64,000 nt of DNA from Hydrolagus colliei (lineage: Eukaryota). Each line of letters begins with the position of its first letter. The stretch's first letter is position 1. Below the pieces are notes generated by a model. The model was not told the DNA's origin, ran no database searches, and saw only the letters and a program-made list of their open reading frames with translations. This document shows, piece after piece, positions 27,521-64,000 of this stretch. The DNA lies in contig CM068761.1 of the NCBI GenBank assembly GCA_035084275.1, positions 8,742,001-8,806,000 of the forward strand, written 5' to 3'. Both the position numbers and the translations under genes were made by a program.

Positions 27521-27609
27521 AAGGCTCTTTCATGGCCTAGGCGAGCCTTCAGATGTGCACCCCCCAGTAACTTTCCAGTAACGGCGCCTACCCCTCACAT
27601 TGCTACATA

Positions 27610-28189: not shown

Positions 28190-28278
28190 CAGGGCCGGCG
28201 CCAACAAAATTTTGGTGCTTCCAAAATATTGGCACCTTAGGTGACTGCCTAGTTTGCCTAATGGTAGTGCTGGCCCTG
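28190..28278. mobile_element. 89-bp hAT-like MITE
   Basis: Ends CAGGGCCGGCGC ... GTGCTGGCCCTG are inverted; related element at 56781-56850; no clear TSD. Confidence 0.6.
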
Positions 28279-28329
28279 GGCGTGGACCAGCGTTTTGCCA
28301 GCATTTGGGATGAAATAATGGCAAAGACA

Positions 28330-30619: not shown

Positions 30620-31470
30620 GACAAGAACATAAGAATTAGGAGCAGGAGTAAGCCATTTAGCCCTTCGAGTCTGTTCCGCCATTCAATAAGATCATGGCTG
30701 ATCGTCTCATCTAACTCTGATTACCTGCCCTATCCCCATACCCCTAATTTCCCTATTTTTCAAAAATCTATCTGTCTCAGCCTTGAAAATGTTCAACGAC
30801 TGAGCATCTATAACCATTTGGGGTAATGAGTTCCACAAATCCACTGCCCTCTGAGTGAAGAAATGTTTCCTCAACTCTCTTCTGAAAGGGTGACCCTTAA
30901 TTTTAAGACTGTGAAACCTGGCTATAGGTTCTCCTACCAATCTCTCAATATCTACTTTATCTTGCCATTTAATAACCTTATATGTTTCAATAAGATCCCA
31001 TCTAATCCTTCTGTACTCTGGAAAATACAGCCCTGGTTTATTCAACCTATCCTTATAGTCCCCTCATCCCAGGAACTAACCTAGTGAATCTACGCTGCAC
31101 CCCCTCTAAGGCAAGTGTGTCATTTTTTAATTAAGGAGCCCGAAACTGCATACAATACTCTAGGTGTGGTATCACCAAAGCTCTGTACAGTTGCAGCAAG
31201 ACTTCCCTACTCTTGCACTCTAAACCTTTTGAAATGAACGCTAGCATGCCGTTCGCCTTCTTAGTTGCTTGCTGCACCTGCAAACTAACTTTTTGGGACT
31301 CGTTTACAAGGACACCCAAATCCCTTTGAACACTGATACTATCTAACTTCTCCCCATGTAGAAAATAATCTATTGTTTTATTCTTGCTACCTAGGTGAAT
31401 AATTTCACACTTGCTGACATTGAATTCCATCTGCCACCTACTTACCCACTCCCCTAGCCTATCTATATCT
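30620..31470 (-). mobile_element. CR1 LINE 3' fragment, paralogue of 17914-18790
   Basis: ORFs 30707-31045 and 31131-31430 (MEFNVSKCEIIHLG, RDLGVLV, PHLEYCMQF); same flanking context as the 17914 copy. Confidence 0.85.
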
Positions 31471-32581
31471 CCTGTAGCCTATCTATACCTAGATATTGAT
31501 AGTGAGGTGGGATCAGAGGTTTTGGAGGGCAAGGCATGTTGGGACTGAAGGGTTTTACGACGCGTATAGAAGGAATCAAGGGAGGGAGTGAACAGAGGTA
31601 GGAAGGAACAAGGCCGTAGGGATCTTTGAAGTCGATGTTGAGAAATTTTGACTTTAGCCTCTGTGAGATGTGGAGCAAATGTGGAGCAAATGTAGCGGAG
31701 GGATGGTGGGGGGTGATAGGTTCATCTGGAGAAAAATATCTCGCATGCAGGAACGCAAAGTAGGAGTCAAGAAAATCCCAGTGTGAGGGTAGGATCGGGC
31801 CTGAAAACTGTGCGATGGTAACTTGGACAGTTCATATTGTGAAATATCTATAAACCGTACACATAGTTTGAAGATGGTGGGCGTCGCTTGAAAAGTGTGG
31901 CTTTCTGTGCAGATGTGCAGCATATCAACTGTAGCAAGTCAGTCTGCAAACTGTAACTGCAAATGTTGTTGGTCCCTCGCTTATCCGGTTATTAGGCAAC
32001 CGAGGGCTATCAAAAAACAGCCGGGCTTATTCTACAGATTAGCCAGAAGTCAACAAAATGCAGAAACAATTATCCGAAATTATCAGAAAAAACTCCCCAA
32101 CATTGACATTCCCTGTGAACTTGGGCAAGTGGTCTTCCGGGATTCACACAATGAAAAGCACACTGTTAATATTTAACTAACAGTGTTAATTAAATATTTT
32201 CGAAGCTGTCAAGTGAACTCATTGTACATTTTCTGGGCGACTCAAGGCAGCCGATGCCACTCTGCAGAGTCCTAGATACAATGGTGGATAGAGAAACCAC
32301 AGTATATATTGAAAATTTGACAACTTTACAACCCGCCAGTGAATCCGCCCAGGTCCTATGCTTCCGAGGCTACTCCTCTAACAACTTTGCTGGAGGACGC
32401 CATGTATCTTCAGTTTACATTAAATACTTTGTTTCTTACTGGAAATAAAATGATTTGATCAATCAAACTCTTCAGGGAGAAACGTTGTATAATATTATCA
32501 TGCAATATCTTTTCAAATATGGGCAGTAAAATGCCTAAAATCTGCATGATATTCAGTTTACTGCTGAGAGCAAGTTTTACT

Positions 32582-32647
32582 ATTGGACAATGCAACCCGG
32601 GGGATGATTTGCATAATCTATCAATTCAACTGAATTTGCATCACCTG
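32582..32647 (+). promoter_or_regulatory. IgL cluster 3 promoter: ATTGG 32582-32586, octamers 32607-32614 and 32634-32641, E-box 32642-32647
   Basis: Two perfect ATTTGCAT starting 27 bp apart. Confidence 0.87.
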
Positions 32648-32741
32648 ATGGTTCTTAAGGAGAAGTTTGGATCAAACACTGAAGTGGCTTTTGTCTGGAA
32701 AATCCCTCATTTCTCTTCAGATCTTCGTCAAACTGTTCACA

Positions 32742-32790
32742 ATGGGCGATTGGCTCCGTGTTCTGGCCGCTTTGCTCCTGTGTCTGCATG
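32742..32790 (+). CDS. IGL: IgL cluster 3, leader exon
   Basis: ATG 32742; MGDWLRVLAALLLCLH-G; donor GTAAG at 32791. Confidence 0.93.
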
Positions 32791-32846
32791 GTAAGCGCTG
32801 CGGAATCCGCACTGATCTCAATTACCTTCACTTTGTACAGTTAGTT

Positions 32847-32910
32847 CTACAGTGTGACCTGTCTACAGTGTGACCTATCTACAGTGTGACCTATCTACAG
32901 TGTGACTTAT
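32847..32910 (+). repeat. 16-bp leader-intron repeat x4
   Basis: Units at 32847, 32863, 32879 and 32895. Confidence 0.9.
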
Positions 32911-32932
32911 CTGTGACTTGTTATTTCTCCAG

Positions 32933-33280
32933 GAACAACCGCAGCTGTTACCCTGACTCAGCCACCGTCCATCTCAACCTCCCCGGGAAACACCGTCAAG
33001 ATCACCTGTACCATGTCCGGAGGCAGCATCGGCAGCTACTACACGAGCTGGTACCAGCAGAAGCCTGGCAGCGCCCCTGTGCTTGTTTGGCGTGATTATG
33101 ACTCCACCAGAGGTCAGGGGATTCCTGATCGATTCACTGGTTCTACGGGATCATCGGACATGCATTTGACCATCAGGGGTCTGCAGCCGGAGGACGCGGC
33201 TGATTATTACTGTGGTGCTTGTTTGAGCAGCAGTCCGTATACCTTCGTGTTCGGTAAAGGGACCAAACTGAATTTGAAAA
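32933..33280 (+). CDS. IGL: IgL cluster 3, germline-joined VJ exon
   Basis: Acceptor at 32932. Open frame ...[25 protein letters not shown]; donor at 33281. Confidence 0.95.
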
Positions 33281-36013
33281 GTAAGTGATTTTTGCGATTC
33301 TACATTGACTGTGAAGTGGGGAGTCTCGGGTTTACAATAATTATTTTGATCTGGTTCTGTGTGATTCATTTTACAATATAAATGTTTAGCTGCCTTACCC
33401 TCGCTCTGTGTTTAATTCTGTTATACAATATTCCTGTTATGTTTGCATTAAGCAGTAATCTTCGGAATGGTAAGTGATTTATTTACGTGGAATTCGGATA
33501 TTCTGAATTCAGAAACATGTGAACCCTGAGTTTCAATAAGAATCTCTGAAGAATTAAGGATACTGCAGGAAACAAGCAATGACAAAATAACAGCAACAAA
33601 ATTATATGTGTAGAGCGCCTTTCACATCGAGAGGAATTCCCAAGGCGCAGAGCAGACAGGACATGAAAATGGGGGGGTGGGGGTGTTGGCTGGCGGGGTT
33701 TGCAGGGATGAGGGAAGGTGTAGGACGGCGGCTGAAAGCATGGTCGAAGAGGAGGATCTTTAGTTTGGGACTGAGGGGGGAAGGTAGGAAACAAGACAAA
33801 GAAATTGTGAGAAGAAAACTGGGCGAAGGAATTAAATTAATTAGGAGACAACAACAACAAAATTACATTCGTATAGCGCCTTTCATTCGAACGCCGACTA
33901 TGATGGTGGTTAAGTTTACTTTAATATTGTGTATATTCAAAGACTCAATAAAGTATATAAGATTCACTGAACGTCTGCAGATCCTGGTAATGGATGAACA
34001 GCTACAGTGAAAGGATGTAACAGTTTCACACCTGGAATTGAAGAGGAGCTTTCCAGTGCCAAATTACTGAATTGATATACAAACCACAAAATACTACAGA
34101 TGCTGGGAATCTGAAACAAAAACAGAAGTAGGTTGAGTTCTGACGAAGGGTTGTAGATCCGAAACGTTGACTCTTTTTCCTTTCTCCATGGATGCTGCCT
34201 GACCCGCTGAGTTTCCCCAGCAACTTCTGTTTTTGTTACATAAATTGATATGTTTAATTACAATCTTTTACCCGGTTTGTAAGCATGAGGTGATGTTTAA
34301 CCGAACCTTCAGCACAGGAAAATAAACAGCAACTTTCCACAGGGTGAGTCTCCCTCGGCTCCAATAGGTGAGAGTTTCAGATCTTAGAGGGAACTGGATA
34401 TTGGGGACATGTTTCTGTTCTGTAACTACTTGGATGTTTGAAGAATTTAAACTTCCAAGAGACCTCGTAACTCTCTTCAACTGCTGCTCAGATGACGGAA
34501 CAACTCCGAGAGGTTTCTCTGAGCATTATTTGACATCAACTTTTCATCCTCTATTTTAGGATAATTAAAATGCGATAGTCGGCTTCGTGAGCGAATGTGT
34601 ATCTTGGTACAATTTAGACATGCGCAATCAACCACTGCGTTATTCCCAGCATTAATAATCATCCATGTGTTATTTTTTCAGGTAGAGTTGTATTCCTATT
34701 TCTGCTTCTTTAAAATATTTTATTTCCTCCCAATATCGTGGTTGGTGTCACTGAGGAGAGTTCAATTGTAATTTGCAGCAGAGATTCAGTATATCACCTG
34801 TGATTCACCGCAAGTTGCTGTAAGTGATCAATGTGAATCAGTGAAGACACAGGCTGAGCAGCGGTTCAATCTCTCAAACCAGCAATAAAAGCACCAAGAA
34901 ATATTATACATATTGTAGATGTTAAAGATTATTATTTCGCGGGGACAGTATAGCGATCTTTATTGTAAATATAATACAATATATTTCATGAGCCCTACAA
35001 AACATTGTGAAATTGGCAATCACTATTTTAAGCTGCTAAAAATTAATCAACATGCGTCTCAAATGCCTCATATTTTGACTTTTCCTTCCTACAGCATTTA
35101 AGGAAAGTGAACCGTCAGGTTTTCACCCCGGATTGTCCGGTTTTTATTGCGTGTCGCTGATGTCTGAAAAACATTGTGTGTCGAAACGTTGATTTATTAG
35201 GAGAGGAGAGAACGCAAACATTTGCGGATTTATAATGAACTCAATCAGGTCTGATTGGTTGCCTCTTCAAACGAATCGTTACCAATATCATTGCTAATAT
35301 TCTGTTTGCATTTGTAAAGCTCGTTGTATTTCGCGGTGTATTGAACCAGGGGTTTGTACACAAACCGCGTTTAGTATTTATAATTCTCTTTCTCCCGCGT
35401 TTGTTCCCCCAAAATATACAATCAATTCACTTCACCGCACATTCTGTGAATTGCTGTGAGACATCTCGAAAACTTGATAAGGCGTTCTAAAAATGAAAGA
35501 ATTCTTGTTATTATCATCGAGCTGTAAATGGTCAATGAAACAGGCACTATACAATTGTAAATTGTTGTTATCTAGATCTACTTGGAGTTTGGTGAACTCC
35601 GTCACAGTTCAGCAGTACATTAGTGGAGATTCAACCCAGTTTCCTCCCGACTGAAAATTCTTGAAACTCCAAAGTATTCAAATGTGGACAAAGATCTTCC
35701 TTAGATTCGGCGTAGTTGCAAAGTGTCAATTACTTGCATTATTTTTTGCTTCTCCTTTGCGAATCAACTTCAACAGTGATTCAATTAACGATCTAAACAT
35801 TTTACAGCGCGTTCAATCAATTTAACGTCAAGACCATATTACCTGTGACATGATATTTAATGGTTGGTGTCGTTTCTCATTTGTTCAATGTTTTCGTGAG
35901 AATCGACAGATGATATGATAGGCCGTGGAGTTTATTGCGAGGAAAATATTTGATGTATTGTTTTCAACTGTCTTTCGGGGACATTATCTAAATATACAAT
36001 CCTTTCCTTCCAG

Positions 36014-36336
36014 ATCCACGGGCCCCTTCGGTGACTGTCCTTCCGCCGTCACCAGATCAAATCACAGCAAAGAGCAAGGCGACCCTGGTGTGTCTGGTGA
36101 ATGATTTTACCCCGGGAGCTGTGGAGGTCAAGTGGACTGTGGATGGCAGTGCCAGAAGTGAAGGTGTTGAAACGAGTGCGATCAAGCAGGAGGTGGACAA
36201 CACGTACAGTGTGAGCAGTTATCTGACTCTGCCAGCCTCCGAGTGGAAGTCACACGAGCTGTATTCCTGTCTGGTCACACACGAGGCTCGGGCAGATCCG
36301 CTGGAAAAAACCATCGCCAGATCCAGTTGTTCCTAA
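36014..36336 (+). CDS. IGL: IgL cluster 3, constant exon
   Basis: Acceptor ccttccag at 36013; 323-nt open C1-set domain ending SSCS*. Confidence 0.95.
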
Positions 36337-47426: not shown

Positions 47427-47475
47427 ATGGGCGATTGGCTCCGAGTTCTGGCCGCTTTGCTCCTGTGTCTGCATG
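47427..47475 (+). CDS. IGL: IgL cluster 4, leader exon
   Basis: ATG 47427; MGDWLRVLAALLLCLH-G; donor at 47476. Confidence 0.93.
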
Positions 47476-47585: not shown

Positions 47586-47939
47586 GAACAACCGCGGCTG
47601 TTACCCTGACTCAGCCACCGTCCATCTCAACCTCCCCGGGAAACACCGTCAAGATCACCTGTACCATGTCCGGAGGCAGCATCGGCAGCTACTACACGAG
47701 CTGGTACCAGCAGAAGCCTGGCAGCGCCCCTGTGCTTGTTTGGTATCAGTATGGTAGTAGCTCCGGCAGAGGTCAGGGGATTCCTGATCGATTCACTGGT
47801 TCTACGGGATCATCGAACATGCATTTGACCATCGGGGGTGTGCAGCCGGAGGACGCGGCGGATTATTACTGTGGTGCCCAGTATAGCAGCAGTCCGTATA
47901 CCTTCTTGTTCGGTAAAGGGACCAAACTGAATTTGAAAA
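47586..47939 (+). CDS. IGL: IgL cluster 4, germline-joined VJ exon
   Basis: Acceptor at 47585. Open frame with longer CDR2 (WYQYGSSSGRGQG) and [25 protein letters not shown]; donor at 47940. Confidence 0.95.
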
Positions 47940-50179: not shown

Positions 50180-50502
50180 ACCCACGGGCACCTTCGGTGA
50201 CTGTCCTTCCGCCGTCACCAGATCAAATCACAGCAAAGAGCAAGGCGACCCTGGTGTGTCTGGTGAATGATTTTATCCCGGGAGCTGTGGAGGTCAAGTG
50301 GACTGTGGATGGCAGTGCCAGAAGTGAAGGTGTTGAAACGAGTGCGATCAAGCAGGAGGTGGACAACACGTACAGTGTGAGCAGTTATCTGACTCTGCCA
50401 GCCTCCGAGTGGGAGTCACACGAGCTGTATTCCTGTCTGGTCACACACGAGACTCGGGCAGATCCGCTTAAAACAAGCATCGCTAGATCCAGTTGTTCAT
50501 AA
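50180..50502 (+). CDS. IGL: IgL cluster 4, constant exon
   Basis: Acceptor tctttccag at 50179; 323-nt open C1-set domain ending SSCS*. Spliced product is 241 aa. Confidence 0.95.
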
Positions 50503-51307
50503 TCAGGAATGTGCAGCGCTGGTCGGTAAATTTCCCGACTGAAGGGAAGGAGCCATTTAGATTTGTTTTATGTATTTAAACTGGTAACAATGTTAGTAAC
50601 ATCGATGGTAACATCGTTTGCCTCAATTTTACACGGTATTCTCTTCATGTACACAAACAATAATAAAATATCTCTGCATTGTCCCCTGTGCCGTCACTCA
50701 TTTTGTTCCAGATTTTCTTTCCGATCAGTCAAACCATCAGATTTTCATCTTATTTTAATTATTCAGAGCAAAAGTGACATAAAAGAGTGACCATTTGATT
50801 AAATTAGAGACATGCTTACGGGAGGATCTGTTACATTTAGAGTAATTCATAGCAACTGGTTCCGTTATCTGTTGTGCGCTCCAGGGGCTTTGAGGCTGAA
50901 AACCTCACCTCGTGTCAGCCTGTAACATAATATGGTCTTTAAACTTTAACATTGTCTGCGATCCGAGGGAGGGGGGTGAGCACTTGAATTCAATCTTAAT
51001 TTGTAAGTCGCTTTTCCGTATTTTCAATAAAACAAACAATTTCCCAATTGAGACATTTCCACAATTCTGGTGCAATTTTAAATGTTACGACAAACTGGTG
51101 GATTTCATCTTCTGAGTTCGTTGTTCAGAAATGTTTGATTCCAACTTCCGCTCGGCAATGACGTTGCTAATTTATCAACATGAGCGGGTGTCGCTGTATC
51201 AACGGTTCAACGTTGCAAGTGGGTTACATTGATGTTTTCCCCTTTTTTTGCAAACTATAACATCGCTAAACATATATACACCTGATACTAAAGGTCGATA
51301 TTCAATA

Positions 51308-51560
51308 TCATAGAATCATAGAATACTACAGTACCGAATGAGGCCATTTGACTCGGTGTGTCTTGCTGGATCTTTAACAAGAGCAGTCCGAATCACTGCC
51401 ACTTCCCCCACTCTGTCCCAATAGCCATACAGCTGTCTCTACAAATAGTTATCTGTTTCTCTTTAGAGTTGTTATCGAACTGGCTTCTTCCACCCTTTCA
51501 GGTAATGCATTCCTGATCAGAACAACTCGCTGAATGAAAAATATTCTCCTCACATTCCCT
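51308..51560 (-). mobile_element. Short CR1 3' fragment, paralogue of 24957-25210
   Basis: atcatagaatcatagaat tail followed by gaatgaggccatttg. Confidence 0.65.
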
Positions 51561-52869
51561 CTTTTTCTTTTAACAAACTATTGAAAAACTACTTTCAATA
51601 TATTATTAAAGATTGGATTATTTATTTGGAGTATAAGAAGCCCAGAAACAACATGTTTTCAACAAATTCCACCTGATCGAGGTCAATATATACTTCAGAC
51701 TCAGGAAAAGTCAAAACATATGAATTACATAGTATGTGGTGAAGACATTATATACAGTAAATTTCGAGAGAAACTCTATGTCAATCCAGTTCCATCTTGG
51801 CCAAATCCACCGCTTTAGCTAAGTGCCAAAGACCAGATGTGGGGAGGATGGACAGCTGGGGGGTCGAATCAGGTGCCTAATTTACGCACTGGTTCAGTGA
51901 GTCTGAGGGAGAACCCAGGGAGCTTGATGAGTTTAGATATGCAGGAGTGAAGGAGTGGAAGCTAAAGAGTATTGCTTCTCCACATTCAACTGCATGAAGT
52001 GTGCGCTCAACCAGTCCCTGATGTCTGTCAGACAAGCTGAGAAAGCATCGGTGGACCTGGAGCTGAGATGGGAGGAGACACAATATAGTTCTGGGTGTGT
52101 GCTGCATTGTCAGAGGTGCTTCCTTCTTAGAAGTGTTAAACTAAAGTCCCAACTGCCTGTCCAGATGAATGTCAAGCATCTCATGGCAGTATTCCAAAAG
52201 AGAAGGAAACGGAGCTCAGTGTTCATGGCCAATTATTCCCCAAATAAAATTGATTTAAATCAATTATAACCCACAGAACACATGCTGCCACTTGACTTGA
52301 GAGTATACATTGTCAGGTGTATTGGGACATACTCAGAGGATAGAATTCAAAATGATTTCCTCACTTTCAAGGCCCTCCAGAGCCTTCCCCCTTTCTATCT
52401 CTCTTACCCCCTGATACCCAATCAACCTGTCTCCATTGAGGAGGCTCTGGCCTGCTCCATGTCTCTTGCCCTACCCGCTTTAGCATCAGCGGCTAAACAT
52501 TCAGCCTCTCTTCCCCCACTCTTTGGAACTCCAGCCTACAATCCCTTCACCTTGATGCATTCCATGCATCCTGCAAGACCCAACTCAACACCCTCCTTTT
52601 TGACGGTGCCTTCAGTCATCCTCCTCTAAGGATTCCGTGGCACTATTCCAAAAAAGGAGGAAATTTATATCAGTGTTCATGGCCAATGGTTCTCCAAATA
52701 AAATTGAACTAAGGCTATTATAACACAGAGAATACACACTGGCACTTCACAAGAGAGTATAGATTGTCAAATGTATTGGGACATCCTCCTAAAGCACTGG
52801 TCCTCAGAGGATAAAATTAAAAATCCCTGTCCACACTTTCAAGGCCCTCCACAGCCTTCCTCCTTTCAA

Positions 52870-55540
52870 AACAACAAGAACAGCAACTTTGATTTATATA
52901 GTGCCATCCACACCAGACGGCATCTCAAAGTGCTTCAGAACAATGGATCAAGGGAACCGAGCCAGGGGCAGGAGTAGAAAGGTGACCAAAGGCTCGGTCA
53001 AAGAGCAAGGTCTTTAGCTGGGATCTGAAACTGGGAAGAGAGTGGGTAAGGCGAAGGCAGTGAGGAAAGCAGTTCCAAAGCCTCGGGGTGTAGTGGCTGA
53101 AAGCATGGCCACCGAGGGTGGAGTGGAGGATTCAGGGGACACGGAGCAGGCCGGACTCGGTGGAGTGAAGGTAACGGGTGCTGGTTTGAGGAGAGAGGAG
53201 GTTGGAGAGGTAGGGCGTGCAGAGGAGTCCAGGGATTTGAAGACAAAGGTGAGGATCTTGAAATTAATCCTCTCTAGGAGGCAGTGAAGTCTGGCAAGGA
53301 CTGGAGTAATGGGGGAGCAAAGTTTGGTGCAGGTGAGAATGCGGACGGCACAGTTTTGAATGAGTTGGATTTTATGATTGTGGTGGAGGGGAGACCAGTG
53401 AGGAGGGCATTGGAATCGTCCAGCTGAGAGGTGACAAAGGCATGGACCAGGGTTTCAACAGCTTTTGAGTGAGATATTGCCAGAGACGGGCGATCCAGTA
53501 GAGGTGGAAGAAAGCGGTGCTGGTGAGGGATCGGATGTGGGGGAAGAAGAACAGTTGGGGGTCGAACCTGGTGCTCAGATTTCACACGGGTTCGGAGAGT
53601 TTTAGGGACAGGCCAGGAAGGTGGAGGAGGTAAGAGCTGTGCAACATGGAGACATTGACAAGAGCCAAAGAATATGGCTTCCATCTTGTCAACATTCAGC
53701 TGTAGGAAGTTTGCACTCATCCAGCTCCTGATGTCTGACAGGCAGGCTGACAGAACATCAGGGGACTGGTGGTCGGAAAGTGAGGTAGAGAAATAGAGTT
53801 GGGTATCATCCGCATAGAATCATAGAATCATAGAATCATAGAATTTTACGGCACAAAAGGAGGCCATTCGGCCCATCTAGTCTGTGCCGGCTCTTTGAAA
53901 AGAGCGATTCAATCCCACTGCCCTGCCCGCTCCCCATAGCCTAATAGACCCGTTCTCCCTAAATAAAGATCTAATTCCCTTTTAAAAGTTGTTATCGAAT
54001 CAGCCTCCACCACCTTTTCAGGCAATGCATTCCAGATTCGAACAACTCGCTGAGTGAAAAAATTTCTCCTCAGCTCCCCTCTACTGCGCCTTGAAACTAT
54101 TTTAAATCTGTGACCACGAGTCACAGATTCACCCACGAGTGGAAATAGTTTTTCTCTATTTGCCCTGTCGAAACCCCTCATGATCTTATAAACCTCTATT
54201 AGGTCTCCCCTCAATCTTCTCTGCTCCAGAGAGAATAATCCTAGCCTATCTAGCCTCTCCTCATAGCTGAAGTCACTCAATCCTGGCACCATCCTAGTAA
54301 ATCTTCTTTGTACCCTTTCCAATGCCTTCACATCCTTTCTGTAGTGTGGTGACCAGAATTGAACACAGTATTCCAGCTGAGGCCTCACCAAAGTCCTATA
54401 GAGGTTAGTCAGCACTTCCTGACTTTTGTACTCTATACCCCTATTTATAAAGCCTAGTATCCCATATGCCTTCTTAACAGCCTTGTCTACCTGTCCTGCC
54501 ACCTTCAACGAGTCACTAACACAAATCCCCAGGTCTCTCTGTTCCTTCACACCATTTAGAAATTGTACTATCTAGCCTATATTGCATACATGTGGAAGTG
54601 TACCCCATGTCTGCGCCCACATCCCAAAAGGGAGCATATAGATGAGGAAGAGAAGGGGGGCCAAGGATGGATCCTTGGGATACCCCGTAGGTAACCGGGT
54701 GAGAACGGGAAGAAAAGCCATTTGTGAAGATGCACTGATGGTAGGAGGTAGGACTCGAACCAGCCAGTTGTGGTCCCACTGAGGTGGATGATGGAGGACA
54801 GGCAGTGGAGGAGGATGGCATGGCCGACTGTATTGAACGCAGCAGACCCGTCCAGGAGGATAAGGAGGCCTGGTCACAGATAGAGAGGACATCGTTTGTA
54901 ACTTTCACAAGCGCAATCTCTGAATTATGGGCAGGGCCGAATCCAAACTGGAGGGGTTTGAAAAGGGAGTGGGAGGAGAGGTGGGAGCGGAGTTGGTTGG
55001 CAACAATGCTTTTGAGTGCTTTGGCAAGGAAAGGCAGGTTTGAAATAGGGATCTGGGAAAGGTTGTTTTAGGAAGGGGGTGATGGCAGCACTTTTCAGGG
55101 GGTCAGGGACTGATCGTGTGTAGAGTGATTGGTTGATGATGTCAGCTAGCAGTGGGCAGAGGAGGGGGAGCTGGGTGACCAGTAAGTTGGTTGGAAGAGG
55201 ATCAAGGTAGAAGTTGGTGGGCTTCATAGAGGTCATGGTGCGTGAGAGGGAGGAAGGAGAGATGGGGAGAATGAATGTAGGAAGGGGAGCATGGTAGGAG
55301 CTGATGCCGGGGAGGGTGAGGGAGACATAATGGGGGTGTTGGTTGTGGTCGACGAGAAGCAGAAGAATGAGGCTGCCTGGTGAATGTTTTGGATTTTGGA
55401 GGAGAAGAAGTTCATGACCTCCTCGCACTTCGCATTTGAAGTGAAGATTGAAGATGCCTGAGGGGGCGCACGGAGGAGGTGGTGGGTGGTGGGAAAAAGG
55501 ACTTTTGAGTTGTGTTTTGCCTGCAGGATGATACCTCTCT
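52870..55540 (-). mobile_element. Long degenerate L2 LINE (RT to 3' end) interrupted by a CR1
   Basis: LDPLPTNLLVTQLP, MKVTNDVL, FHMYA|DDTQL split by the insertion, NFLQLNVDKMEAI, LVHAFVTSQLDDSNALL. Confidence 0.82.
53817..54583 (-). mobile_element. 5'-truncated CR1 LINE with an uninterrupted 213-aa ORF2 C-terminus
   Basis: ORF 53909-54550 (RDLGI, VRPQLEYCVQFWSPH, ALERVQRRFTRMV, LFSLEQRRLRGDLIEVYKI, FFTQRVVRIWNALP); (CATAGAAT)4 tail at 53813-53844; flanked by GCATA. Confidence 0.92.
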
Positions 55541-55559
55541 TACCTCTCCTACCCGCTGA

Positions 55560-55850
55560 CACCTTATCAATCTGTCTCCATTCAGCAGGCTCTGGCCTGC
55601 TCCATGTCTCCTGCCCGACCCGCTCTATCATCGGTCGCTGAGCTTTCAGCCTCTTTGCCCCCACCCTTTGGAATTCCAGCCTAGAATCCCTTCGCCTTGA
55701 TCCCTTCCATGCATTCTTCAAGGCCCAACTCAAGACCCTTCTTTTCGACCGTGCCTTCAGTCGTCCTCTTATCTCTCCCATACCATCACTTCTCCCCCAC
55801 AACCCCACTCTCACCCCCATGCTGACTGTTCAGTGCCTTGAAATTTTGTT
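55560..55850 (+). mobile_element. L2 3' tail fragment
   Basis: gagctttcagcctctttgcccccaccctttggaattcc...ttcaaggcccaactcaagacccttcttttcgaccgtgccttc. Confidence 0.65.
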
Positions 55851-56780
55851 TTGTTGTTGTGACCGGTACGCATTCTGCTAATGCTGCCACAATATCTACA
55901 AGTTGTTGTTGTTTTTATTTCCCGGCATTTTGGGACATCAGCCCTACATGAAAGATCTACATAAATCAAATTTGTTGTTGTTGTTAGATGAAGAAGTGTG
56001 GTTGAAATGCAATACTGAAAAGATAAAAAGGAAAGGATTCACAGAAAATTAACTCACAAGAGCCAGACACAAAACCAATTGCACAAAAAGAGAGTGGATA
56101 AGGATAGAAAGATCAGAGATAGAAAGTGAGGGAGAGAAAACTACGAAGCCATATGGATCCATCCTGGCATAACCACTTTATTTATTGTTTGATATATTCA
56201 CATGAATTTTTTTGAATTGAACATCTACAGTTGCAAATGTGAAACGAACCACTAGACATAGTGATATGAAATTGGCCGAGAAATCGCCTTGAATGAATTC
56301 AGTGTGATTGTTCCTATGAATGTCATCTCTATGACCTCTCTGATTTGTGGGCTTTCATTAATGCTTGCTGGGAAATGCGTGTTAACTCTTCCAAATCCAT
56401 GACAAGTCGGATGGATTGTTAGCAGAGAGAAAACTTTGTTCTCTTGATTTTTAGCTGAGTTCAGATACAGACACATATTTTTCAGGAAAACTGTTGTCAT
56501 TTCAGCTGCTCTACCCATGTCTGCATACAACAATAATAATAACACCTTACATTGGTGAAGCATCTTTCATGTTGGGAGGATGCCAAGAGTAATGTAAACA
56601 TTTTTCTGCATAGACAGAATAGAAATTAAAGTAAAACTTTGTTTATCTGGTACCCAACCAAACGGCATACTCAACCAACCAGTATCTCTCAATACAATTC
56701 ACCATTCCAGCAATCAGATCTCATACCGTAGCAGTCAGGGACACTCACGGTATCCTCACTGTAAGTGTGCGTGGGGCATG

Positions 56781-56850
56781 CGGGGCTGGCGCTACCTTTA
56801 GGCGAACTAGGCGGTTGCCTAGGGCCAAAATTTGGGGAGCGCTGGCCCTG
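56781..56850. mobile_element. 70-bp hAT-like MITE
   Basis: CGGGGCTGGCGC ... GCGCTGGCCCTG inverted ends; related to 28190-28278. Confidence 0.5.
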
Positions 56851-57969
56851 ATCAGCATACTAACAACTGCAATGGTTGGGGGACAGTACCTGAATTTTGC
56901 CCTCCTCTTGCTCTCTGTACTAACGGTCCCCGCCAGTCACATCAACTCAGCATCCCGTTGGTTGCCACTTGCATCAATCAGACAGGAGCCGTTCACGCCC
57001 TGTTAGGGTGAGTTCACTTTAATGGCCTGCCCTCAAGGCTGCTCGTGCCCTTTGCTATTGACCCAATCAATTGATAAGGTTACTTCAAGGTTACAATTTC
57101 AATACATGATCGAATATTTGAGCAACAGATTTACAGTATTAATTAACTTGTGCTTCTACAAATAAGTAATATGAATATATAATAGTACAACAATAACAGC
57201 TTGGACTTATAGAGAGCCTTTCAAGTAGAAAAATATCTCAAAGCAGTTGACAGAGCAAAGCATGGGCTTCAGCGAGCTAAGAGATAGGAAGGGTACTAGG
57301 AGAGTTGAGATTTCTGATTCCGAGAATTCCAATGATGACCAACAATCCTTATAGGTATAATTAAGTTTAATGTTTGATGTAGGTATAAATCATAGTTATT
57401 AGATACCGTAATCACAACACAAAGTATTAGTCTTAAGATATAATAATGAGGGTAACGAGCATAAGTATAAGTCACATAAAAGATATCTAAGTATACTACC
57501 AGGTTCACACTACACTCAGCTGAGAAGTTGTGAAGAGGTTCTATACTCACAGCTGGAACCATTGCACACCCTTGCCTGCTGCTCGAGCCTCGTTCTTTTT
57601 TTCCTACCTCAAAACTTCTCCAATTATACTCTTTTTCCCAGACTTCGACCCTCACTGTAGATTAATTCAGTGGGACAAAGTTCTCTATCATATCTCGAAG
57701 GTGATGGAGTATCTACCCTTTCTTATCAACCGGGGTCAGGGTCCCATACTCCAATTTGTTCCCTGCGGAATGCAATCTGGTCCTGGCCAAAACTACGTAA
57801 TTTCACTATGTTTATACATTTGTTTGTTATATTTGGATACAGAATGATACCTATAAATACATGTTATGTCTAAACCTGTTTTTCCCAACAGGAGGGAGAT
57901 GACCAAAGGTGGATTTGGGGAAGGGTTTTGAAAGCAGAGAGGGAGTGTGGAAGGGAGAATGCTTTACGG

Positions 57970-58759
57970 TAGGGTCCGATATATCGCTAAAACCTGATAT
58001 AATTTTCATATAGATACGCCGATCTGGGCATTTCAAAAATATCAATATATCGAAAAAATCGATATATCGAGGGAAAAAATCAGAATGCGCGTACACTGAA
58101 CTACCAGAACGCAGACCGAAGTGCAAAGCCGCACAGGTATGCAAGGGGTGAGGGGAGAGAGATGGCTGGGTGGGGTGGGGGTGAGGGGGAGAGAGATGGC
58201 TGGGGGGTGGGGGTGAGGGGGAGAGAGATGCCTGGTGGGTGGGAGTGGGAGAGAGACGGCTGGGGGAGGGGAGGGAGAGAAAGATGGTGGGGGGGAGGGT
58301 GAGAGAGACGGCAGGGGGGGAGGGGGAGAGAGACGGCTGGGGGGGATGGGGGGGGAGAGAGACGGCGGGGGTGGGTGGGTGGGAGAGAGGGACGGCGGCG
58401 GGGGGGCGGGAGGAGAGAAGGACGGCGGCGGCGGGGGGGGGGGGGGGGTGTGGGGGGAGAGATGGGGTAGATGTGATAATATACAGATAGATAGATAGAG
58501 ATGGGAGGGATGTGAGACAGGAGAGAGACACAAAGACACAGACAGAAAAACACAGAGATGGAGAGAGGGAGTGTGAGAGACACAAAGAAAGATATTTGCC
58601 TCCTGAGGAAATAGGCCCCGAATACGCGCGCACTCCGAATGCGCACGCTGCGCGCGCATGCGCAGTACGAACAACCCGAAAATATCGATATTTCGGTATA
58701 TCTCGATATGAGCCCATTGATATATCTAAATCGGAAAATTTCCATATCGACGGACCCTA
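57970..58759. mobile_element. hAT-like non-autonomous transposon with a G-rich core
   Basis: Termini TAGGGTCCG ... CGGACCCTA; 8-bp flanks CTTTACGG / CTTTGTGG (6/8); many subterminal ATATCG repeats; G/A-rich interior at 58140-58590. Confidence 0.78.
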
Positions 58760-59523
58760 CTTTGTGGTGACATTTTCAGAGAGCAAAGAGGTGAAAATTG
58801 TATTCACCCATGCTGGGGTGGAAGGAGTGAGTACATGTGCAGGTAGATACGGGATTGCAATAAAAAGTAAGTGAGCTGCAGAACTCCGAATAATTTGATG
58901 ATAAAAATTGGATCTCTTACGTCAGGAGAATACAAAAATGAAACTTAAAGGTGATAAAGGAATGGGTCGGGTTGGAGCTGTGTTATTGTGAGGAAGATAC
59001 AGAATCAGGTAATATTCTGAAGGTGGGGAAAAACAGACTTGATCAATGACTGGATGAAAGTTTTGTGGAAATTATGTTGAAGGGAGTTTAAGACTTTAAG
59101 ACAGCAGCGTTCCTGGGATCAATACAAATCAATTATGTGTTGCAAGTGTAGGAATGGTTTACACATGTATTCCATAGTTCGTAAAAGATCTTATCCCGTA
59201 TGCTACAATCAATTATATCTGATACACTACTTTATTCTTTGTGAACCAAACCACTTCGTGTTTTGTAAAGTTATTGAGTACATGTTTGTTCAGCTGTGTG
59301 CTGAGCTCAATGGTGAATACTCAGGGTGAATATGAGCTTGAAATTTGCAACAGAGTGATAGCATAATATTAGCACAATATAACCCAATTGTTTCAGACAG
59401 AAAGAAGACATTCGCATCACTGTTCAAAAGAGTGCAAAGGTTGGAAATCCAGTAAAGAACGTCTGACAAGTCAAACAACTATCTATTGGGTTTGATAGCA
59501 TATAATTTAGTTGCATAATGTGT

Positions 59524-60105
59524 TCACATTGCATTCTCAAAGGTATCTTCTTGTGGAGTTAAAATGGCTGCCTTGGAAAAACCTTCAAATTTCCTGAGAA
59601 ATATGATCACGAGTATCAAAAGAATGGCTTGAATGATAATAAAGATGAAGAGTCCAATCTGACAAATCAGAGCAACTGTACAGTACCATTTCTGACAGGT
59701 GGGGACAATCTCATCTTCTGTTAGATACAAGATCCGTCTATCACGAAGCTCAACTGGCAGATAACACTTTATATTCTTATCCTGCAAACTTCTTTCTTGA
59801 TTAAGGAGCCAGGATCGCAGGTACAATATATTACAATCGCATACCCATGGGTTATCATCCAGTGAAATCGACCTCAGGTGTTGCAAGTTGTCAAACAGTC
59901 CATTGGGGATGGAGAATAACTTGTTGTTGTTCAGCCTGATCTCTGTTGTAGTGGCTTCAAAGTGCTTGGGGAGAGTGCTGAGGTTTAGCATTTGTCCACT
60001 GCAATCAACAGTGTTGTCGGAACACCTGCAAGGTTCCAAACACTGAAACACAGCCATTGGGATCAGAGACAGGATGAGGAAAATGCTTTGTGGTCTGATC
60101 ATCAT
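59524..60105 (-). CDS. GP1BB: Platelet/thrombocyte glycoprotein Ib beta chain-like: signal peptide, LRRNT, one LRR, LRRCT, TM, short tail; 193 aa
   Basis: CxxPCxC...VDC, LNNNKLFSIPNGLFDNL, NPWVCDC...LRSWL. VDCSGQMLNLSTLPKHF..TTEIRL, LRDRRILYLTEDEI and CTVALICQIGL align by eye better to recalled human GP1BB than to GP9. A ctaac...tttcag acceptor lies immediately before the ATG, so an upstream exon is likely. Confidence 0.82.
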   Translation of the reverse strand: MMIRPQSIFLILSLIPMAVFQCLEPCRCSDNTVDCSGQMLNLSTLPKHFEATTTEIRLNNNKLFSIPNGLFDNLQHLRSISLDDNPWVCDCNILYLRSWLLNQERSLQDKNIKCYLPVELRDRRILYLTEDEIVPTCQKWYCTVALICQIGLFIFIIIQAILLILVIIFLRKFEGFSKAAILTPQEDTFENAM

Positions 60106-62809
60106 CTGAAATATAGTTAGCTGTCTGCAAAATTAAAAAATCGGGCTTAAGTAATTGTAACCACACAACTTGAGGAAAATACTTTTACAACATGGACAAC
60201 TATAACCATTAGGCTCTTTAATTTACAGGGTTAAAGACATGTCAAATCGATTGAAAAGGCAAAAGTTAAACAGTTAATCAGGTTGTAACATACTTGGCTG
60301 ATAGATGTATCTCATGGAGCAAACTCAATCCTTCCTATAAGTGATTTTTATACTGGGAGAAAGAGTATTCAAGTTATCTTTGGTAAGGTTCTAATTCCGA
60401 GTCCATGGTCAACCATAATGCAGGGAAATTACTACATCTTGCATGAGGGAAATTACTACATTTCCCTCATGCAAGAGCATGAGGGAAATGTAGTAATTGT
60501 ACAGCGAGGTAGGAAGAAGCAAACTATCTGTGGTATCAATTTGGGAACTGAATGTTTACCTGAAATAAAGTATCTCCTTCATAAATATGCCAGCAAATTC
60601 ATTATGATACAAAATTACTCAAATTTTAACATGGTTCTATCACTTTGAAAGAGCACTTCTTAAAACAATTCATAGATAATTATTGTCAAACATAGTGCCT
60701 ACTTGGCAAGCCAGCACCATCAAGTGTTGGATGTCCTCCTGGTGTGGAAGGGGCTATATACAGTAAATTTAAACATTTATTGTACTTTTGTAGGCATACG
60801 TGACCCATCTATTTGCTTTCACGAGATCCTACTAACTGCCACGAGGTGATTAATCAATTATTTTCTCAATAATCTCAGATCTTGCTAGTCAAAGTATAAA
60901 CAGAGACCAAAGAAATAGTGTAGGCAGTAATATTTAGTCCAACTAGCTACGCAATATGAATCCCTGCCTGCAAATATGAATATACAAAGAGGAAGAAAGA
61001 ATGCGTAAAGAAATGAAAAGGGTTGTTTTACCAAGAGAAACCACTTACCAGTAGATGCAACCACCCTTTGTTTTGCATAACTCATCATTCCCAAACCCTT
61101 ATATACTTTCCATATGGTTCGTGGGCATGTCAGATGACTCAATCCTTATTACTGGCTAATGAACGAGTTATCATTGTATTGATTCACACATAACTCAGTT
61201 AAGAAATCTGAAATGTTTACCAATTTACTTAGAGGACTTTTTTATATTCTCCTTTCACATCCCAGTTGTCAATAATTCAATAATTAATTTGAGAAACCCT
61301 AAATAGTATCACAAACTTTCATATACAATGTAGCTAAAAATAAACCTCAGTCTATCATAATGAAATGTCTCAATTACCTTTAAATGTCCTCCGGAATGCG
61401 TAATTGCACTTCACAATGAACGTCCTTCGTATCTGTTTAAATAAAAGTGAATCTGAGTTTATATTGTAGAAAATTATACACAGGAGGCATGCAAATACAA
61501 TATAACTCATTAAATCCTCTTGAACTCGGATCAAATTTAGTGATCATACCTCCTTCAAGGTTCGGGGCTACTTAAGGGGCTAACTCTGTTGCTGCTGATA
61601 AAAGGACCACATCATCAGATAAAAACCAACAGGACAAACACATAAACTCAGAAATGACCAATAAGATGTACAGAAAGTGCACTGCATCAGAATGTTGTGA
61701 CATTGCAGATAACAAAATAGCATCGGGTCCTATGGTTATTTGCATTTGTTTTGGTTAAAATACACAAACTCACATCTCTGATACCGAACCTGATTTTATT
61801 CCTAATCAACTAGAGAGACAAATGAATCTCATTCAGTTAGCACTGCAAATCGTTGGGCTTCGCATTTGTACTGAGTAATGTTCAAAATTATTTGTATTTG
61901 AACTAAGAAAAATAATACATCAATGATCAATTACAACTGGGAAATGTATCTGATGTTAATAATAATAATAATCCTTGCATTTGTTACGGCACATTATCAT
62001 CGTTGTTGAGACACCTCAAAATGTTTCACATACAAGATACGTTGCTAAAGTGGCTTGACAATCTATTTTGTGGTTGAAACATAGCATTCAATTGCATATG
62101 TTAAGCACATAACTGCTGAACAAGTATTTGTTAAAAACTACTAACATGGTTAGTGGAGCAAACAAGCAATCTTGTTTATATTTCTCCAATTTTAGATTAA
62201 ATAATAATTTCAAAAGAAATGCCCAATGAATGACCCTCAGCCATAAACCCAGACACTATATTCTATTGTCCGCACACAGAATGAAATATTTTGTTGACAT
62301 GCATGACACATCTATTAGAACATTGCTGAATACCGTCCCAAGTGTATAAGACAATTTGAGTATAGAAATGGGAGCAATCCTCATCTTTTCACTTTTGTAA
62401 AAAGAGAAGTAGAGGCTTTTAGACGAGGTTGGATTTTGGCAGCAGAGCAGTGGTGTTGCATATGAGTTTGCATATTTATTCTGAGTTTATCTCTGCCAAC
62501 CTCCCGGACAACTCATTATCAGGGCATGGCAGGGGAGTATGCCTGAGGCTTAGCCATGTTTGCAAAACATTGTCAGTTCAGTTGAATTGGAAAACTAGAT
62601 TAGATTCGTGGAAAACTAGTTGCAAGTAAAGCAAGCTAATTCTGTGATAGTACTGCATCTGCTTTTACAATTCAAAGTATTTCGGAAAAAAAAGAGTCAC
62701 TCAAATATTGTATAAAATGGAAATGTAAGCTTGGATGTGACATGTTGAAACACTTAATTAATTGAAACGATAATCATAGAACGTTAGGAAATAATAATAT
62801 CAAATAATA

Positions 62810-63112
62810 ATCATTGCAATTGATTTGAGAAGCACTATGAAGCACTTTGAGATGTCTTCTAGATGTCTCAAAGTGCTTCACAGAATTTACTGCAAAATGA
62901 ATTGACTGTGTATATGTGGGTGAATCATTGCAGCCAATTGCACACAGCAGTGTCCCACAAACAATCGTGGATTGCAATGACCAATTTATAATTTTTTTGA
63001 GGGATTATTATTAGGCATGTGGAATAAGGAAACTTGCCCGACATTTCGCCCTGTCTGGAATCCAACCTAGATCCCTCACTTGTAAGGCGAGTGCTCTAAC
63101 CACTGAGCTACA
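62810..63112 (-). mobile_element. Short tRNA-derived Deu-type SINE
   Basis: Reverse head tgtagctcagtggttagagcactcgccttacaagtgagggatctaggttggattcc (A box, anticodon-like arm, B box) joined to tttgtgggacactgctgtgtgcaattggctgc core. Confidence 0.75.
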
Positions 63113-64000
63113 GGACTCTACATTCTGTAAATGAAAAACCTCTGATAATGGTAAAGTAACTTACATATATACAATTATCATTTATTAGGTGTAAAACTTA
63201 AAAAAGCAATTGAATTCAATTCATGACCTTTGACATTTTTACGCAACAAGAATCTGTTGTTGTATCCACTTTATTCACTTATGACAGTACAAATAGTCTG
63301 TATGTAATAAAGGTATCAATATACTGTATATTTATCCTTATTGCTGATTTATGGACAGGCAATTAGTTAAGATTGTTTTTCATGTCGTTACCTATTGAAT
63401 ACAAATGTGGAACTATTTACACATTTCCTTATGATGTGTTTTGCCCACAAAATATACAATCAATTCACTAAACAATATATTCATGCCTTTCTACCTATGC
63501 ATAACAATTTGTTTTAATGACCCAGTTTGATCTGATGTATAAATTGAATTTCTTACTCCAAGTTGTATAAACCAATACAAGGTTCCCAGCGCCTTGGGAC
63601 ATCCTCCAGACATGAAAGGCGCTCTATAAATGTAAATGTAATTTTGTTGTGCTGTTGTAGTTACTTCCCCAATTTCACGTGAATAACAAAAGGTCAAATG
63701 TTTGAAATTCAAGCCACTTTATACTGTAAAAGCAACATGTGATTTGTAATACTTCAACCCATTTCTTTTTCTTAATATAAAACTTTTAAAGCACATTCAA
63801 ATTCAAGAAAAACAAGGGAATAAAAGAAAATTACAATCATTAATTACAATAAAGACTGCCAGCCTCAAGATGAAGATCAGAATAATTTTGTCCCATGAGA
63901 ACAATTAATTTTATATGTGGAATATAAAACTAGTTAATACTATGATCTGTTAATAATATACTATACCCTTTTACAAATGATTTGTATAATATATTATAAT

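What the first reader, a model, noticed from the sequence alone, without database searches (positions are those of the whole stretch)
50180..60105. GP1BB lies 9 kb from the lambda clusters: candidate ancient synteny with the human 22q11 Ig lambda region
The last C exon ends at 50502 and a GP1BB-like gene ends at 59524, tail to tail, with only repeats between. In human, GP1BB (with SEPT5 directly upstream) is at 22q11.21 and IGL at 22q11.22. Inference: this array marks the ancestral gnathostome lambda locus, giving synteny-based support for orthology of chondrichthyan type II chains with tetrapod lambda, and marking one edge of the array. Prediction: SEPT5 lies to the right of this window on the - strand.
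Basis: partly seen in the sequence, partly recalled or inferred. Interest (0 to 1): 0.75.

Follow-up and report, generated by a model that had tools for sequence, protein, structure and literature searches.

The report
GP1BB gene beside chimaera lambda light-chain clusters
An intact platelet glycoprotein Ib-beta gene lies 9 kb, tail to tail, from the last lambda-type antibody light-chain cluster of a chimaera; four other cartilaginous-fish lineages have the same neighbourhood, and in humans both genes lie in 22q11, so the linkage looks ancient, though the genes themselves are ordinary.

Summary
The last light-chain C exon runs 50180-50502 (+). A 193-aa ORF at 59524-60105 (-) ends 9,021 bp away, tail to tail.

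The ORF is a true GP1BB orthologue. It is 83% identical to Callorhinchus GP1BB. In a tree it is sister to Callorhinchus GP1BB (100/99) and is separated from a GP9 clade (94/94) that includes shark GP9.

The light chains are germline-joined type II/lambda. The best hit is a Hydrolagus colliei light chain at 92% identity.

New evidence from relatives:
- The same convergent GP1BB/lambda layout occurs in Heptranchias (4 kb apart), Carcharodon (at most 127 kb), Pristis (at most 147 kb) and Heterodontus (at most 248 kb).
- Lambda-like genes share a chromosome with GP1BB or SEPT5 in 14 elasmobranch species.
- In the sawfish Pristis, SEPT5 ends 11.6 kb upstream of GP1BB on the same strand. This supports the SEPT5 prediction, although no septin exon lies in the 3.9 kb left in the window.

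Two caveats. The sawfish also has a lambda-like gene 508 kb beyond SEPT5, so GP1BB need not be the edge of the whole array. The link to human 22q11 rests on one gene pair that sits about 2.3 Mb from IGL.

Verdict: real, conserved across Chondrichthyes, and plausibly ancestral to jawed vertebrates. It supports an orthology that is already accepted. Interest is moderate.

The parts
47427..47475 (+). Leader exon of light-chain cluster 4
   Evidence: ATG at 47427 and a GT donor after 47475, read directly. The spliced product is 92% identical to a Hydrolagus colliei light chain.
47586..47939 (+). Germline-joined VJ exon of cluster 4
   Evidence: An open frame runs from framework 1 through YYC...FGKGTKL with no recombination signal between V and J, and the donor is at 47940.
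50180..50502 (+). C exon of cluster 4, the last one before GP1BB; the stop codon is at 50500-50502
   Evidence: Acceptor AG at 50178-50179. Pfam C1-set E 6e-27.
50523..55778 (.). Spacer sequence that still belongs to the duplicated cluster unit; it carries decayed retroelement-like ORFs (e.g. 53909-54550, minus strand)
   Evidence: blastn finds 66-82% identity to the regions downstream of other C exons (23884-29530, 36489-37255, 13739-14470). No Pfam hit for any ORF. The retroelement reading rests on my memory of CR1/L2-type ORF2 tails, not on a test.
58145..58444 (.). G-rich minisatellite with a period of 28-32 bases
   Evidence: Tandem Repeats Finder. It accounts for the long low-complexity ORFs at 57851-58745.
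59524..60105 (-). GP1BB orthologue: a single-exon coding sequence of 193 aa (signal peptide, LRRNT, one LRR, LRRCT, membrane-proximal Cys, transmembrane helix, short tail)
   Evidence: It is the only stretch of 55779-64000 that is strongly conserved at the DNA level with five elasmobranch loci.
60106..64000 (-). GP1BB upstream region; it contains no septin exon
   Evidence: tblastx with caecilian and killifish SEPT5 exons, which are 85-90% identical to each other, finds nothing here.
4891..36336 (+). Three further intact VJ + C clusters (VJ 4891-5169 / C 7466-7771; VJ 20398-20673 / C 23432-23737; VJ 33013-33288 / C 36031-36336) and one pseudo-C exon at about 13266-13588
   Evidence: ORF list, tblastn, and an in-frame TAA at 13310-13312.

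Best explanation
The window comes from a chimaerid holocephalan, probably Hydrolagus or a close relative. It holds the end of a tandem array of germline-joined type II (lambda) light-chain miniclusters. An intact GP1BB gene follows on the opposite strand, so the 3' ends of the last cluster and of GP1BB converge across 9 kb. GP1BB encodes the beta subunit of the thrombocyte GPIb-IX-V adhesion receptor and has no functional tie to the antibody genes; the two are simply neighbours. The neighbourhood SEPT5 -> GP1BB -> <- IGL-lambda was already present in the last common ancestor of living cartilaginous fishes. Most likely it descends from the jawed-vertebrate ancestor. In humans the same genes remain together in 22q11 (SEPTIN5-GP1BB in q11.21, IGL in q11.22), spread apart by later insertions and rearrangements. 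Shown here: the identities of the genes, the layout, and its conservation in Chondrichthyes. Inferred: continuity with the human arrangement, and the presence of SEPT5 beyond the right end of this window.
For: GP1BB identity: best PDB match is human GPIb-beta, E 8e-30, full length including the transmembrane helix and the aligned membrane-proximal Cys. It is 83% identical to Callorhinchus GP1BB and 45-53% to amphibian, bird, squamate and teleost GP1BB. In the ML tree it is sister to Callorhinchus (100/99), inside the chondrichthyan GP1BB clade (87/98), and split 94/94 from a GP9 clade containing Heptranchias and Stegostoma GP9. Lambda identity: 92% to a Hydrolagus colliei light chain and 69% to sandbar-shark 'Ig lambda'. 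Type II is equated with lambda in Table 2 of PMC5985310. P0076 is the sequence used as Pristis 'IgLL' in PMC12227049. Conserved layout, always convergent: Heptranchias 4,080 bp; Carcharodon 127 kb; Pristis 147 kb; Heterodontus 248 kb. SEPT5: Pristis septin 5a ends 11,577 bp upstream of GP1BB on the same strand. A septin ends about 4-4.5 kb upstream in the caecilian and the killifish. Human: SEPTIN5, the SEPT5-GP1BB read-through and GP1BB are in the proximal 22q11.2 deletion interval (PMC9149807), and IGL is at 22q11.2 (PMC13113880). Genes of that same interval (SLC25A1, CLTCL1, ESS2, GSC2, DGCR6, DGCR2, HIRA, TSSK2) are among the genes named in the legend of a tetrapod synteny figure for the VpreB3 and surrogate-light-chain loci, which lie at or in IgL (PMC9614664).
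Against: Only one locus, the SEPT5-GP1BB pair, ties the shark neighbourhood to human 22q11. The human distance is about 2.3 Mb (my knowledge of GRCh38), roughly 250 times larger than here. 22q11 is known to be prone to rearrangement. In four of the six chondrichthyan lineages looked at (Heterodontus, Carcharodon, Pristis, Hemiscyllium) no light-chain exon lies within 10 kb of GP1BB, so the tight adjacency may be ancestral or may be secondary. The 127-248 kb distances are to whichever lambda gene was looked up, not necessarily the nearest one, and the genes in between were not seen. In sterlet and gar the lambda locus is reported next to IFT81 (PMC5985310), which is on human 12q24 (my knowledge) and not on 22q11. 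Kappa, sigma and sigma-2 clusters were not mapped, so it is not shown that the linkage is specific to lambda. SEPT5 was not observed in this genome.
Confidence: 0.7

Rival explanations
1. The linkage is chondrichthyan-specific and the resemblance to human is coincidence. Lambda clusters came to lie beside GP1BB in the chondrichthyan stem lineage, by duplication or translocation of miniclusters, and the shared 22q11 address in humans is unrelated.
For: Shark Ig miniclusters multiply and their numbers vary between species (PMC12227049). Only one anchor locus is shared with human. Ray-finned fish lambda is reported beside IFT81 instead.
Against: A random human gene has roughly a 0.2% chance of lying within 2.5 Mb of IGL (my estimate: 5 Mb out of 3,100 Mb). 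In every chromosome-level chondrichthyan assembly, all listed lambda-like genes sit on one chromosome, which argues against free dispersal. Other genes of the proximal 22q11.2 deletion interval are named in the legend of a tetrapod synteny figure for the VpreB3/surrogate-light-chain region at or in IgL. The killifish has a DHX37-like gene directly after GP1BB. DHX37 is on human 12q24 (my knowledge), so 12q24 and 22q11 orthologues may have been one ancestral block, which would reconcile the IFT81 report.
Confidence: 0.15
2. There is only chromosome-scale conservation. GP1BB and lambda simply belong to the same ancient linkage group, so the proximity says nothing specific about lambda orthology, because other light-chain isotypes could lie in the same group.
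For: Distances of 127-248 kb or more in most elasmobranchs. Lambda-like genes on both sides of SEPT5-GP1BB in Pristis, spread over at least 750 kb. Other isotypes were not mapped here. [quoted passage not shown]
Against: The convergent orientation is identical in all five lineages with coordinates. Gaps are under 10 kb in two deeply separated lineages, the chimaera and the sevengill shark.
Confidence: 0.13
3. The 193-aa protein is GP9 or another small LRR membrane protein, so the GP1BB-based synteny argument fails.
For: Pfam gives only sub-threshold LRR_8 and LRRNT hits. Many LRR proteins (VLRs, Slit, LRRTM) score well against it.
Against: Tree and reciprocal searches. A separate GP9 exists in sharks, on another chromosome (P0412, contig 65,719,261, against the Heptranchias GP1BB contig of 48,464,211). 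The full-length alignment to human GPIb-beta includes the transmembrane region.
Confidence: 0.02

Closest known systems
Platelet glycoprotein Ib beta chain (GP1BB), annotated in Callorhinchus milii and in many sharks and rays
   Same: Same length class (184-214 aa). 83% identity to Callorhinchus and 60-70% to elasmobranch GP1BB. Single-exon coding sequence as in Heptranchias. Same order of LRRNT, one LRR, LRRCT, Cys, transmembrane helix. Orthologous placement in the tree.
   Different: Nothing of substance. It is the orthologue in another chimaera, and this exact sequence was not in the protein collection (best cluster hit 83%).
Chondrichthyan type II (lambda) light-chain miniclusters with germline-joined VJ (Hydrolagus colliei, sandbar shark, skate)
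   Same: Leader, joined VJ and C exons within about 3 kb. Units repeat every 13-15 kb. 92% identity to a published H. colliei light chain. The VJ exon also aligns without interruption in Heptranchias, Heterodontus, Carcharodon and Pristis.
   Different: Nothing unusual in the clusters themselves. What is added here is their chromosomal neighbour.
Human 22q11: SEPTIN5-GP1BB (q11.21) and the IGL locus (q11.22)
   Same: The same three genes lie on one chromosome segment. SEPT5 is immediately upstream of GP1BB on the same strand.
   Different: Human IGL is a translocon locus about 2.3 Mb from GP1BB with many genes in between (my knowledge). Here a minicluster array begins 9 kb from GP1BB. The SEPT5-GP1BB gap is 11.6 kb in the sawfish, versus a read-through distance in human.
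Published lambda-locus synteny in bony vertebrates (IFT81 beside sterlet and gar lambda, PMC5985310; TOP3B, MIF and 22q11/12q24 genes in the tetrapod VpreB3/surrogate-light-chain synteny figure, PMC9614664)
   Same: The same kind of argument: flanking genes used as anchors for light-chain loci.
   Different: Neither paper covers cartilaginous fishes. PMC9614664 does not contain GP1BB or SEPT5; PMC5985310 was not searched for those names. No paper in the searchable library combines GP1BB, lambda, synteny and light chain.

Membership tests
GP1BB (platelet glycoprotein Ib beta) | Ectodomain of LRRNT, a single LRR and LRRCT | tested here: met
   phmmer aligns residues 22-138 to the human GPIb-beta ectodomain crystal chains 3rfe and 3rez (E about 1e-24 to 1e-25). 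Pfam LRRNT and LRR_8 hits fall at the right positions but below the curated cut-offs.
GP1BB (platelet glycoprotein Ib beta) | Single transmembrane helix preceded by a membrane-proximal cysteine (the one that bonds GPIb-alpha in human) | tested here: met
   The alignment to 8wfs_c runs through residue 179. The Cys of 'KWYC' aligns with the Cys of human 'GPLC', just before the hydrophobic stretch. That this cysteine forms the disulphide is inferred from the human protein.
GP1BB (platelet glycoprotein Ib beta) | Orthology: groups with GP1BB and not with GP9 | tested here: met
   IQ-TREE places it as sister to Callorhinchus GP1BB (100/99). The GP9 clade, including two shark GP9 sequences, is separated at 94/94.
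GP1BB (platelet glycoprotein Ib beta) | SEPT5 immediately upstream on the same strand | tested here: inconclusive
   No septin exon lies in the 3.9 kb of window upstream. The feature is met in Pristis (11.6 kb), a caecilian and a killifish. The five elasmobranch loci show that the gap exceeds 10 kb, so absence from the window is expected.
GP1BB (platelet glycoprotein Ib beta) | Expressed in thrombocytes and assembled with GPIb-alpha and GPIX | not testable with these tools
   No expression or protein data are available.
Chondrichthyan type II / lambda light chain | V-set plus C1-set light chain whose closest relatives are type II/lambda chains | tested here: met
   C1-set E 6e-27. Top hits are Hydrolagus, Callorhinchus and sandbar-shark 'Ig lambda', and P0076, which is the Pristis 'IgLL' of PMC12227049. 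No tree against kappa or sigma was built here.
Chondrichthyan type II / lambda light chain | Minicluster organisation with germline-joined VJ | tested here: met
   Four units of leader, VJ and C. An uninterrupted frame runs through CDR3 and the FGKGT J motif in all four.
Chondrichthyan type II / lambda light chain | Lambda-type recombination-signal arrangement (V-23 / J-12) | not testable with these tools
   The segments are already joined in the germline, so no signals remain.
Conserved synteny block with human 22q11 | Several orthologous anchor genes around the locus in both species | tested here: inconclusive
   Only the SEPT5-GP1BB pair could be placed.

The most novel reading that the evidence does not exclude
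SEPT5-GP1BB-lambda is the ancestral jawed-vertebrate address of the lambda locus. It sat inside a block that later split into human 22q11 and 12q24. That would give a fixed genomic anchor for assigning light-chain isotype orthology by position from chimaeras to mammals, and for placing lambda relative to the other isotypes in the genome-duplication paralogons.
Probability: 0.5. Interest if true: 0.5.

Novelty: new member of a known kind. Interest (0 to 1): 0.4.

Why it matters
Orthology between cartilaginous-fish and tetrapod light-chain isotypes has rested, as far as I know and in the papers read here, on sequence trees and recombination-signal orientation, and type II genes have lost their signals. 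A positional anchor that holds across roughly 450 million years would be independent evidence. It would also help to define where the lambda array begins and ends in new shark and chimaera assemblies. It changes no classification, because type II = lambda is already accepted.

Tried and rejected
1. I looked for SEPT5 exons by tblastx, using caecilian and killifish septin exons, in window 50503-64000 and within 10 kb either side of GP1BB in five elasmobranchs. None were found. The sawfish gap of 11.6 kb explains this.
2. I considered using RefSeq accession order as a proxy for gene order. I rejected it, because P0069 (XP_051887751) lies at 10.95 Mb while SEPT5 (XP_051887948) lies at 10.72 Mb and GP1BB (XP_051888155) at 10.81 Mb.
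3. A Pfam scan of nine ORFs between the C exon and GP1BB gave no hits, so there is no hidden gene. My 'LINE remnant' label for 53909-54550 rests on memory only.
4. The window's own GP1BB is not in the protein collection (best hit 83%), so the scaffold beyond 64000 could not be fetched.
5. The supplement of PMC12227049, which holds the table of IgL coordinates, is not held. Criscitiello & Flajnik 2007 is not held. The held text of PMC2192082 is too short to be useful.
6. DNA-level conservation upstream of GP1BB amounts to one weak 75-bp match to Heterodontus (61360-61433, E 4e-4). I did not pursue it.
Full report
**What is in the window**

The window carries four light-chain miniclusters on the plus strand, each with a leader exon, a VJ exon and a C exon:
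- VJ 4891-5169 / C 7466-7771
- VJ 20398-20673 / C 23432-23737
- VJ 33013-33288 / C 36031-36336
- VJ 47666-47947 / C 50197-50502 (ORF coordinates)

For the last cluster I read the splice sites directly. The leader is 47427-47475, the VJ exon 47586-47939, and the C exon 50180-50502 with its stop codon at 50500-50502. In all four clusters one open frame runs through YYC, CDR3 and the FGKGT J motif, so V and J are joined in the germline. The C exon is a C1-set domain (E 6e-27).

On the minus strand, an ORF of 193 aa occupies 59524-60105. The 3' ends of the last C exon and of this ORF face each other across 9,021 bp. The coordinates in the finding are correct.

**Identity of the 193-aa protein**

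- Against all PDB chains, the best match is human platelet glycoprotein Ib beta (8wfs_c, E 8e-30). The alignment covers residues 22-179, through the transmembrane helix, and the membrane-proximal cysteine is aligned. Human GPIX scores E 8e-14 over residues 22-104 only.
- The 29 homologues found in the large protein collection include 26 with a source name. Most of those are called GP1BB and the rest are 'hypothetical' or 'uncharacterized'; none carries another family's name. Callorhinchus milii is 83% identical, sharks and rays 59-70%, and amphibians, birds, a squamate and a teleost 45-53%.
- A full HMMER scan of 1.84 billion representatives supplied more distant small LRR proteins. Their source names identified GP9 from Heptranchias, Stegostoma, a frog and a teleost, and GP1BB-like proteins from hagfish and lamprey.
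- In a maximum-likelihood tree the window protein is sister to Callorhinchus GP1BB (100/99). It lies inside the chondrichthyan GP1BB clade (87/98). The GP9 clade is split from all GP1BB at 94/94.

The degree of identity to Callorhinchus, together with a 92% match of the spliced light chain to a Hydrolagus colliei light chain, indicates that the window comes from a chimaerid holocephalan.

**Identity of the light chains**

The spliced cluster-4 product matches Hydrolagus (92%), Callorhinchus (77-81%), and sandbar-shark chains that their source calls 'Ig lambda' (69%). Table 2 of PMC5985310 equates chondrichthyan type II/NS3 with lambda. One of the Pristis hits, P0076 = XP_051887747, is the sequence used as Pristis 'IgLL' in PMC12227049. 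I did not build a tree against kappa and sigma. The isotype assignment rests on these names and on the literature.

**The interval between the two genes**

- Positions 50523-55778 are 66-82% identical to the spacers that follow other C exons in the window. The duplicated cluster unit therefore extends about 5.3 kb beyond the last C exon.
- The remaining 3.7 kb contains a G-rich minisatellite at 58145-58444.
- None of the nine longer ORFs has a Pfam hit.
- Across 55779-64000, apart from one weak 75-bp match, only the GP1BB coding sequence is conserved at the DNA level with five elasmobranch loci.

'Only repeats between' is a fair description.

**Is the adjacency more than chance?**

I looked up GP1BB and lambda-like genes in public chromosome-level assemblies.

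| Species | Record | GP1BB | Lambda-like gene looked up | Gap |
|---|---|---|---|---|
| Heptranchias perlo | CM068661.1 | fetched locus L001, positions 10001-10588 (+) | 14668-19365 (-), joined VJ and C exon confirmed | 4,080 bp |
| Heterodontus francisci | CM071058.1 | 54,942,491-54,943,078 (-) | 54,691,070-54,694,931 (+) | 248 kb |
| Carcharodon carcharias | CM029977.1 | 55,504,803-55,505,557 (-) | 55,374,109-55,377,744 (+) | 127 kb |
| Pristis pectinata | CM019871.1 | 10,806,490-10,807,044 (+) | 10,954,179-10,956,645 (-) | 147 kb |

In all four species, as in the window, the light-chain gene lies on the 3' side of GP1BB and points towards it. The three larger distances are upper bounds, because I looked up one arbitrary lambda gene per species. 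The lower bound is 10 kb, since no light-chain exon lies within 10 kb of GP1BB in those species or in Hemiscyllium.

The 'longest contig' lengths reported for the proteins add further support. They show lambda-like genes on the same chromosome-scale record as:
- GP1BB, in Heptranchias, Heterodontus, Carcharodon, Pristis, Mustelus, Hemiscyllium, Mobula birostris, Mobula hypostoma, Narcine, Hypanus and Hemitrygon;
- SEPT5, in Scyliorhinus canicula, Cetorhinus, Leucoraja and Mobula hypostoma.

In every chromosome-level assembly, all the lambda-like genes listed sit on a single record. The linkage therefore dates at least to the common ancestor of living cartilaginous fishes.

**SEPT5**

In a caecilian and a killifish, a septin gene ends about 4-4.5 kb upstream of GP1BB on the same strand. 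Its exons are 85-90% identical between those two species. They find nothing in window 50503-64000 or within 10 kb of GP1BB in five elasmobranchs.

A search with the hand-spliced killifish septin returned a chondrichthyan 'septin 5a' cluster. The Pristis member maps to 10,715,305-10,794,913 (+), ending 11,577 bp upstream of GP1BB with no called gene between them.

The order SEPT5 -> GP1BB -> <- lambda therefore holds in a batoid. I could not test this directly, because the source assembly is not in the collection.

**Edge of the array**

In Pristis, another lambda-like gene (P0106, 61% identical to the window's chain) lies at 10,203,955-10,206,965 (+). That is 508 kb beyond the 5' end of SEPT5. 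Lambda-like genes thus flank the SEPT5-GP1BB pair on both sides in the sawfish. GP1BB ends the local run of clusters in this window, but it need not mark the edge of the whole lambda region.

**Link to human**

SEPTIN5, the SEPT5-GP1BB read-through transcript and GP1BB lie in the proximal 1.5 Mb 22q11.2 deletion interval (PMC9149807). IGL is at 22q11.2 (PMC13113880). From my own knowledge of GRCh38, the two are about 2.3 Mb apart.

The legend of a tetrapod synteny figure for the VpreB3 and surrogate-light-chain loci, which sit at or in IgL, names other genes of the same deletion interval (SLC25A1, CLTCL1, ESS2, GSC2, DGCR6, DGCR2, HIRA, TSSK2) along with 12q24 genes (PMC9614664).

In sterlet and gar, lambda is reported next to IFT81 (PMC5985310). 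In the killifish, the gene just after GP1BB is DHX37-like. Both are on human 12q24 (my knowledge). This suggests one ancestral block that was later divided between 22q11 and 12q24.

My rough estimate is that a random human gene has about a 0.2% chance of lying within 2.5 Mb of IGL. Continuity with the human arrangement is therefore the most economical reading. It still rests on one anchor locus, and I could not map the other light-chain isotypes as a specificity control. [quoted passage not shown]

**Literature and novelty**

No paper in the searchable library combines GP1BB, lambda, synteny and light chain. The shark-genome and light-chain papers I read do not mention this neighbour. The genes themselves are annotated in related species, and type II = lambda is the accepted view.

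The result is therefore a new orthologue plus a positional observation that appears to be unreported. It is a moderately useful piece of supporting evidence, not a new kind of system.

Noticed in passing
window 13266-13588 (+): A fifth light-chain C exon, 91% identical to the others, carries an in-frame TAA at 13310-13312 where the intact copies have CAA. No VJ exon was detected between it and cluster 1, so it looks like an orphan pseudo-C exon.
   Followed up: partly
window 63047-63116 (-): A tRNA-Val (anticodon TAC) is called by both Rfam (45 bits) and ARAGORN, about 3 kb upstream of GP1BB. It could be a real tRNA gene or a tRNA-derived SINE head; I did not decide which.
   Followed up: partly
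window 50523-55778: The sequence after the last C exon is paralogous to the spacers after clusters 1-3 (66-82% identity). The tandem duplication unit therefore extends about 5.3 kb past the last cluster, and only about 3.7 kb of unique DNA separates the array from GP1BB.
   Followed up: yes
L011 and L009 (Pristis pectinata CM019871.1, 10.20 Mb and 10.95 Mb): Lambda-like light-chain genes lie on both sides of the SEPT5-GP1BB pair in the sawfish, at least 750 kb apart.
   Followed up: partly
L007 12454-20624 (Nematolebias whitei): In the killifish, the gene directly downstream of GP1BB is a DHX37-like helicase (Pfam DHX37_C). DHX37 is on human 12q24 (my knowledge), which hints that 22q11 and 12q24 orthologues were once contiguous.
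   Followed up: no
L001, L008, L009, L011, L012: The VJ exon of the window aligns without interruption through CDR3 and J in Heptranchias, Heterodontus, Pristis and Carcharodon. These lambda-like genes therefore also appear to be germline-joined.
   Followed up: partly
window 61360-61433 vs L002 7458-7529: A weak 75-bp match (75% identity, E 4e-4) lies between the GP1BB upstream regions of the window and of Heterodontus. It may be a conserved non-coding element or a 5' exon.
   Followed up: no
window 58145-58444: A G-rich minisatellite (period 28-32, about 9-10 copies) produces the long proline- and serine-rich ORFs on the minus strand and glycine-rich ORFs on the plus strand. These ORFs are not genes.
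   Followed up: yes
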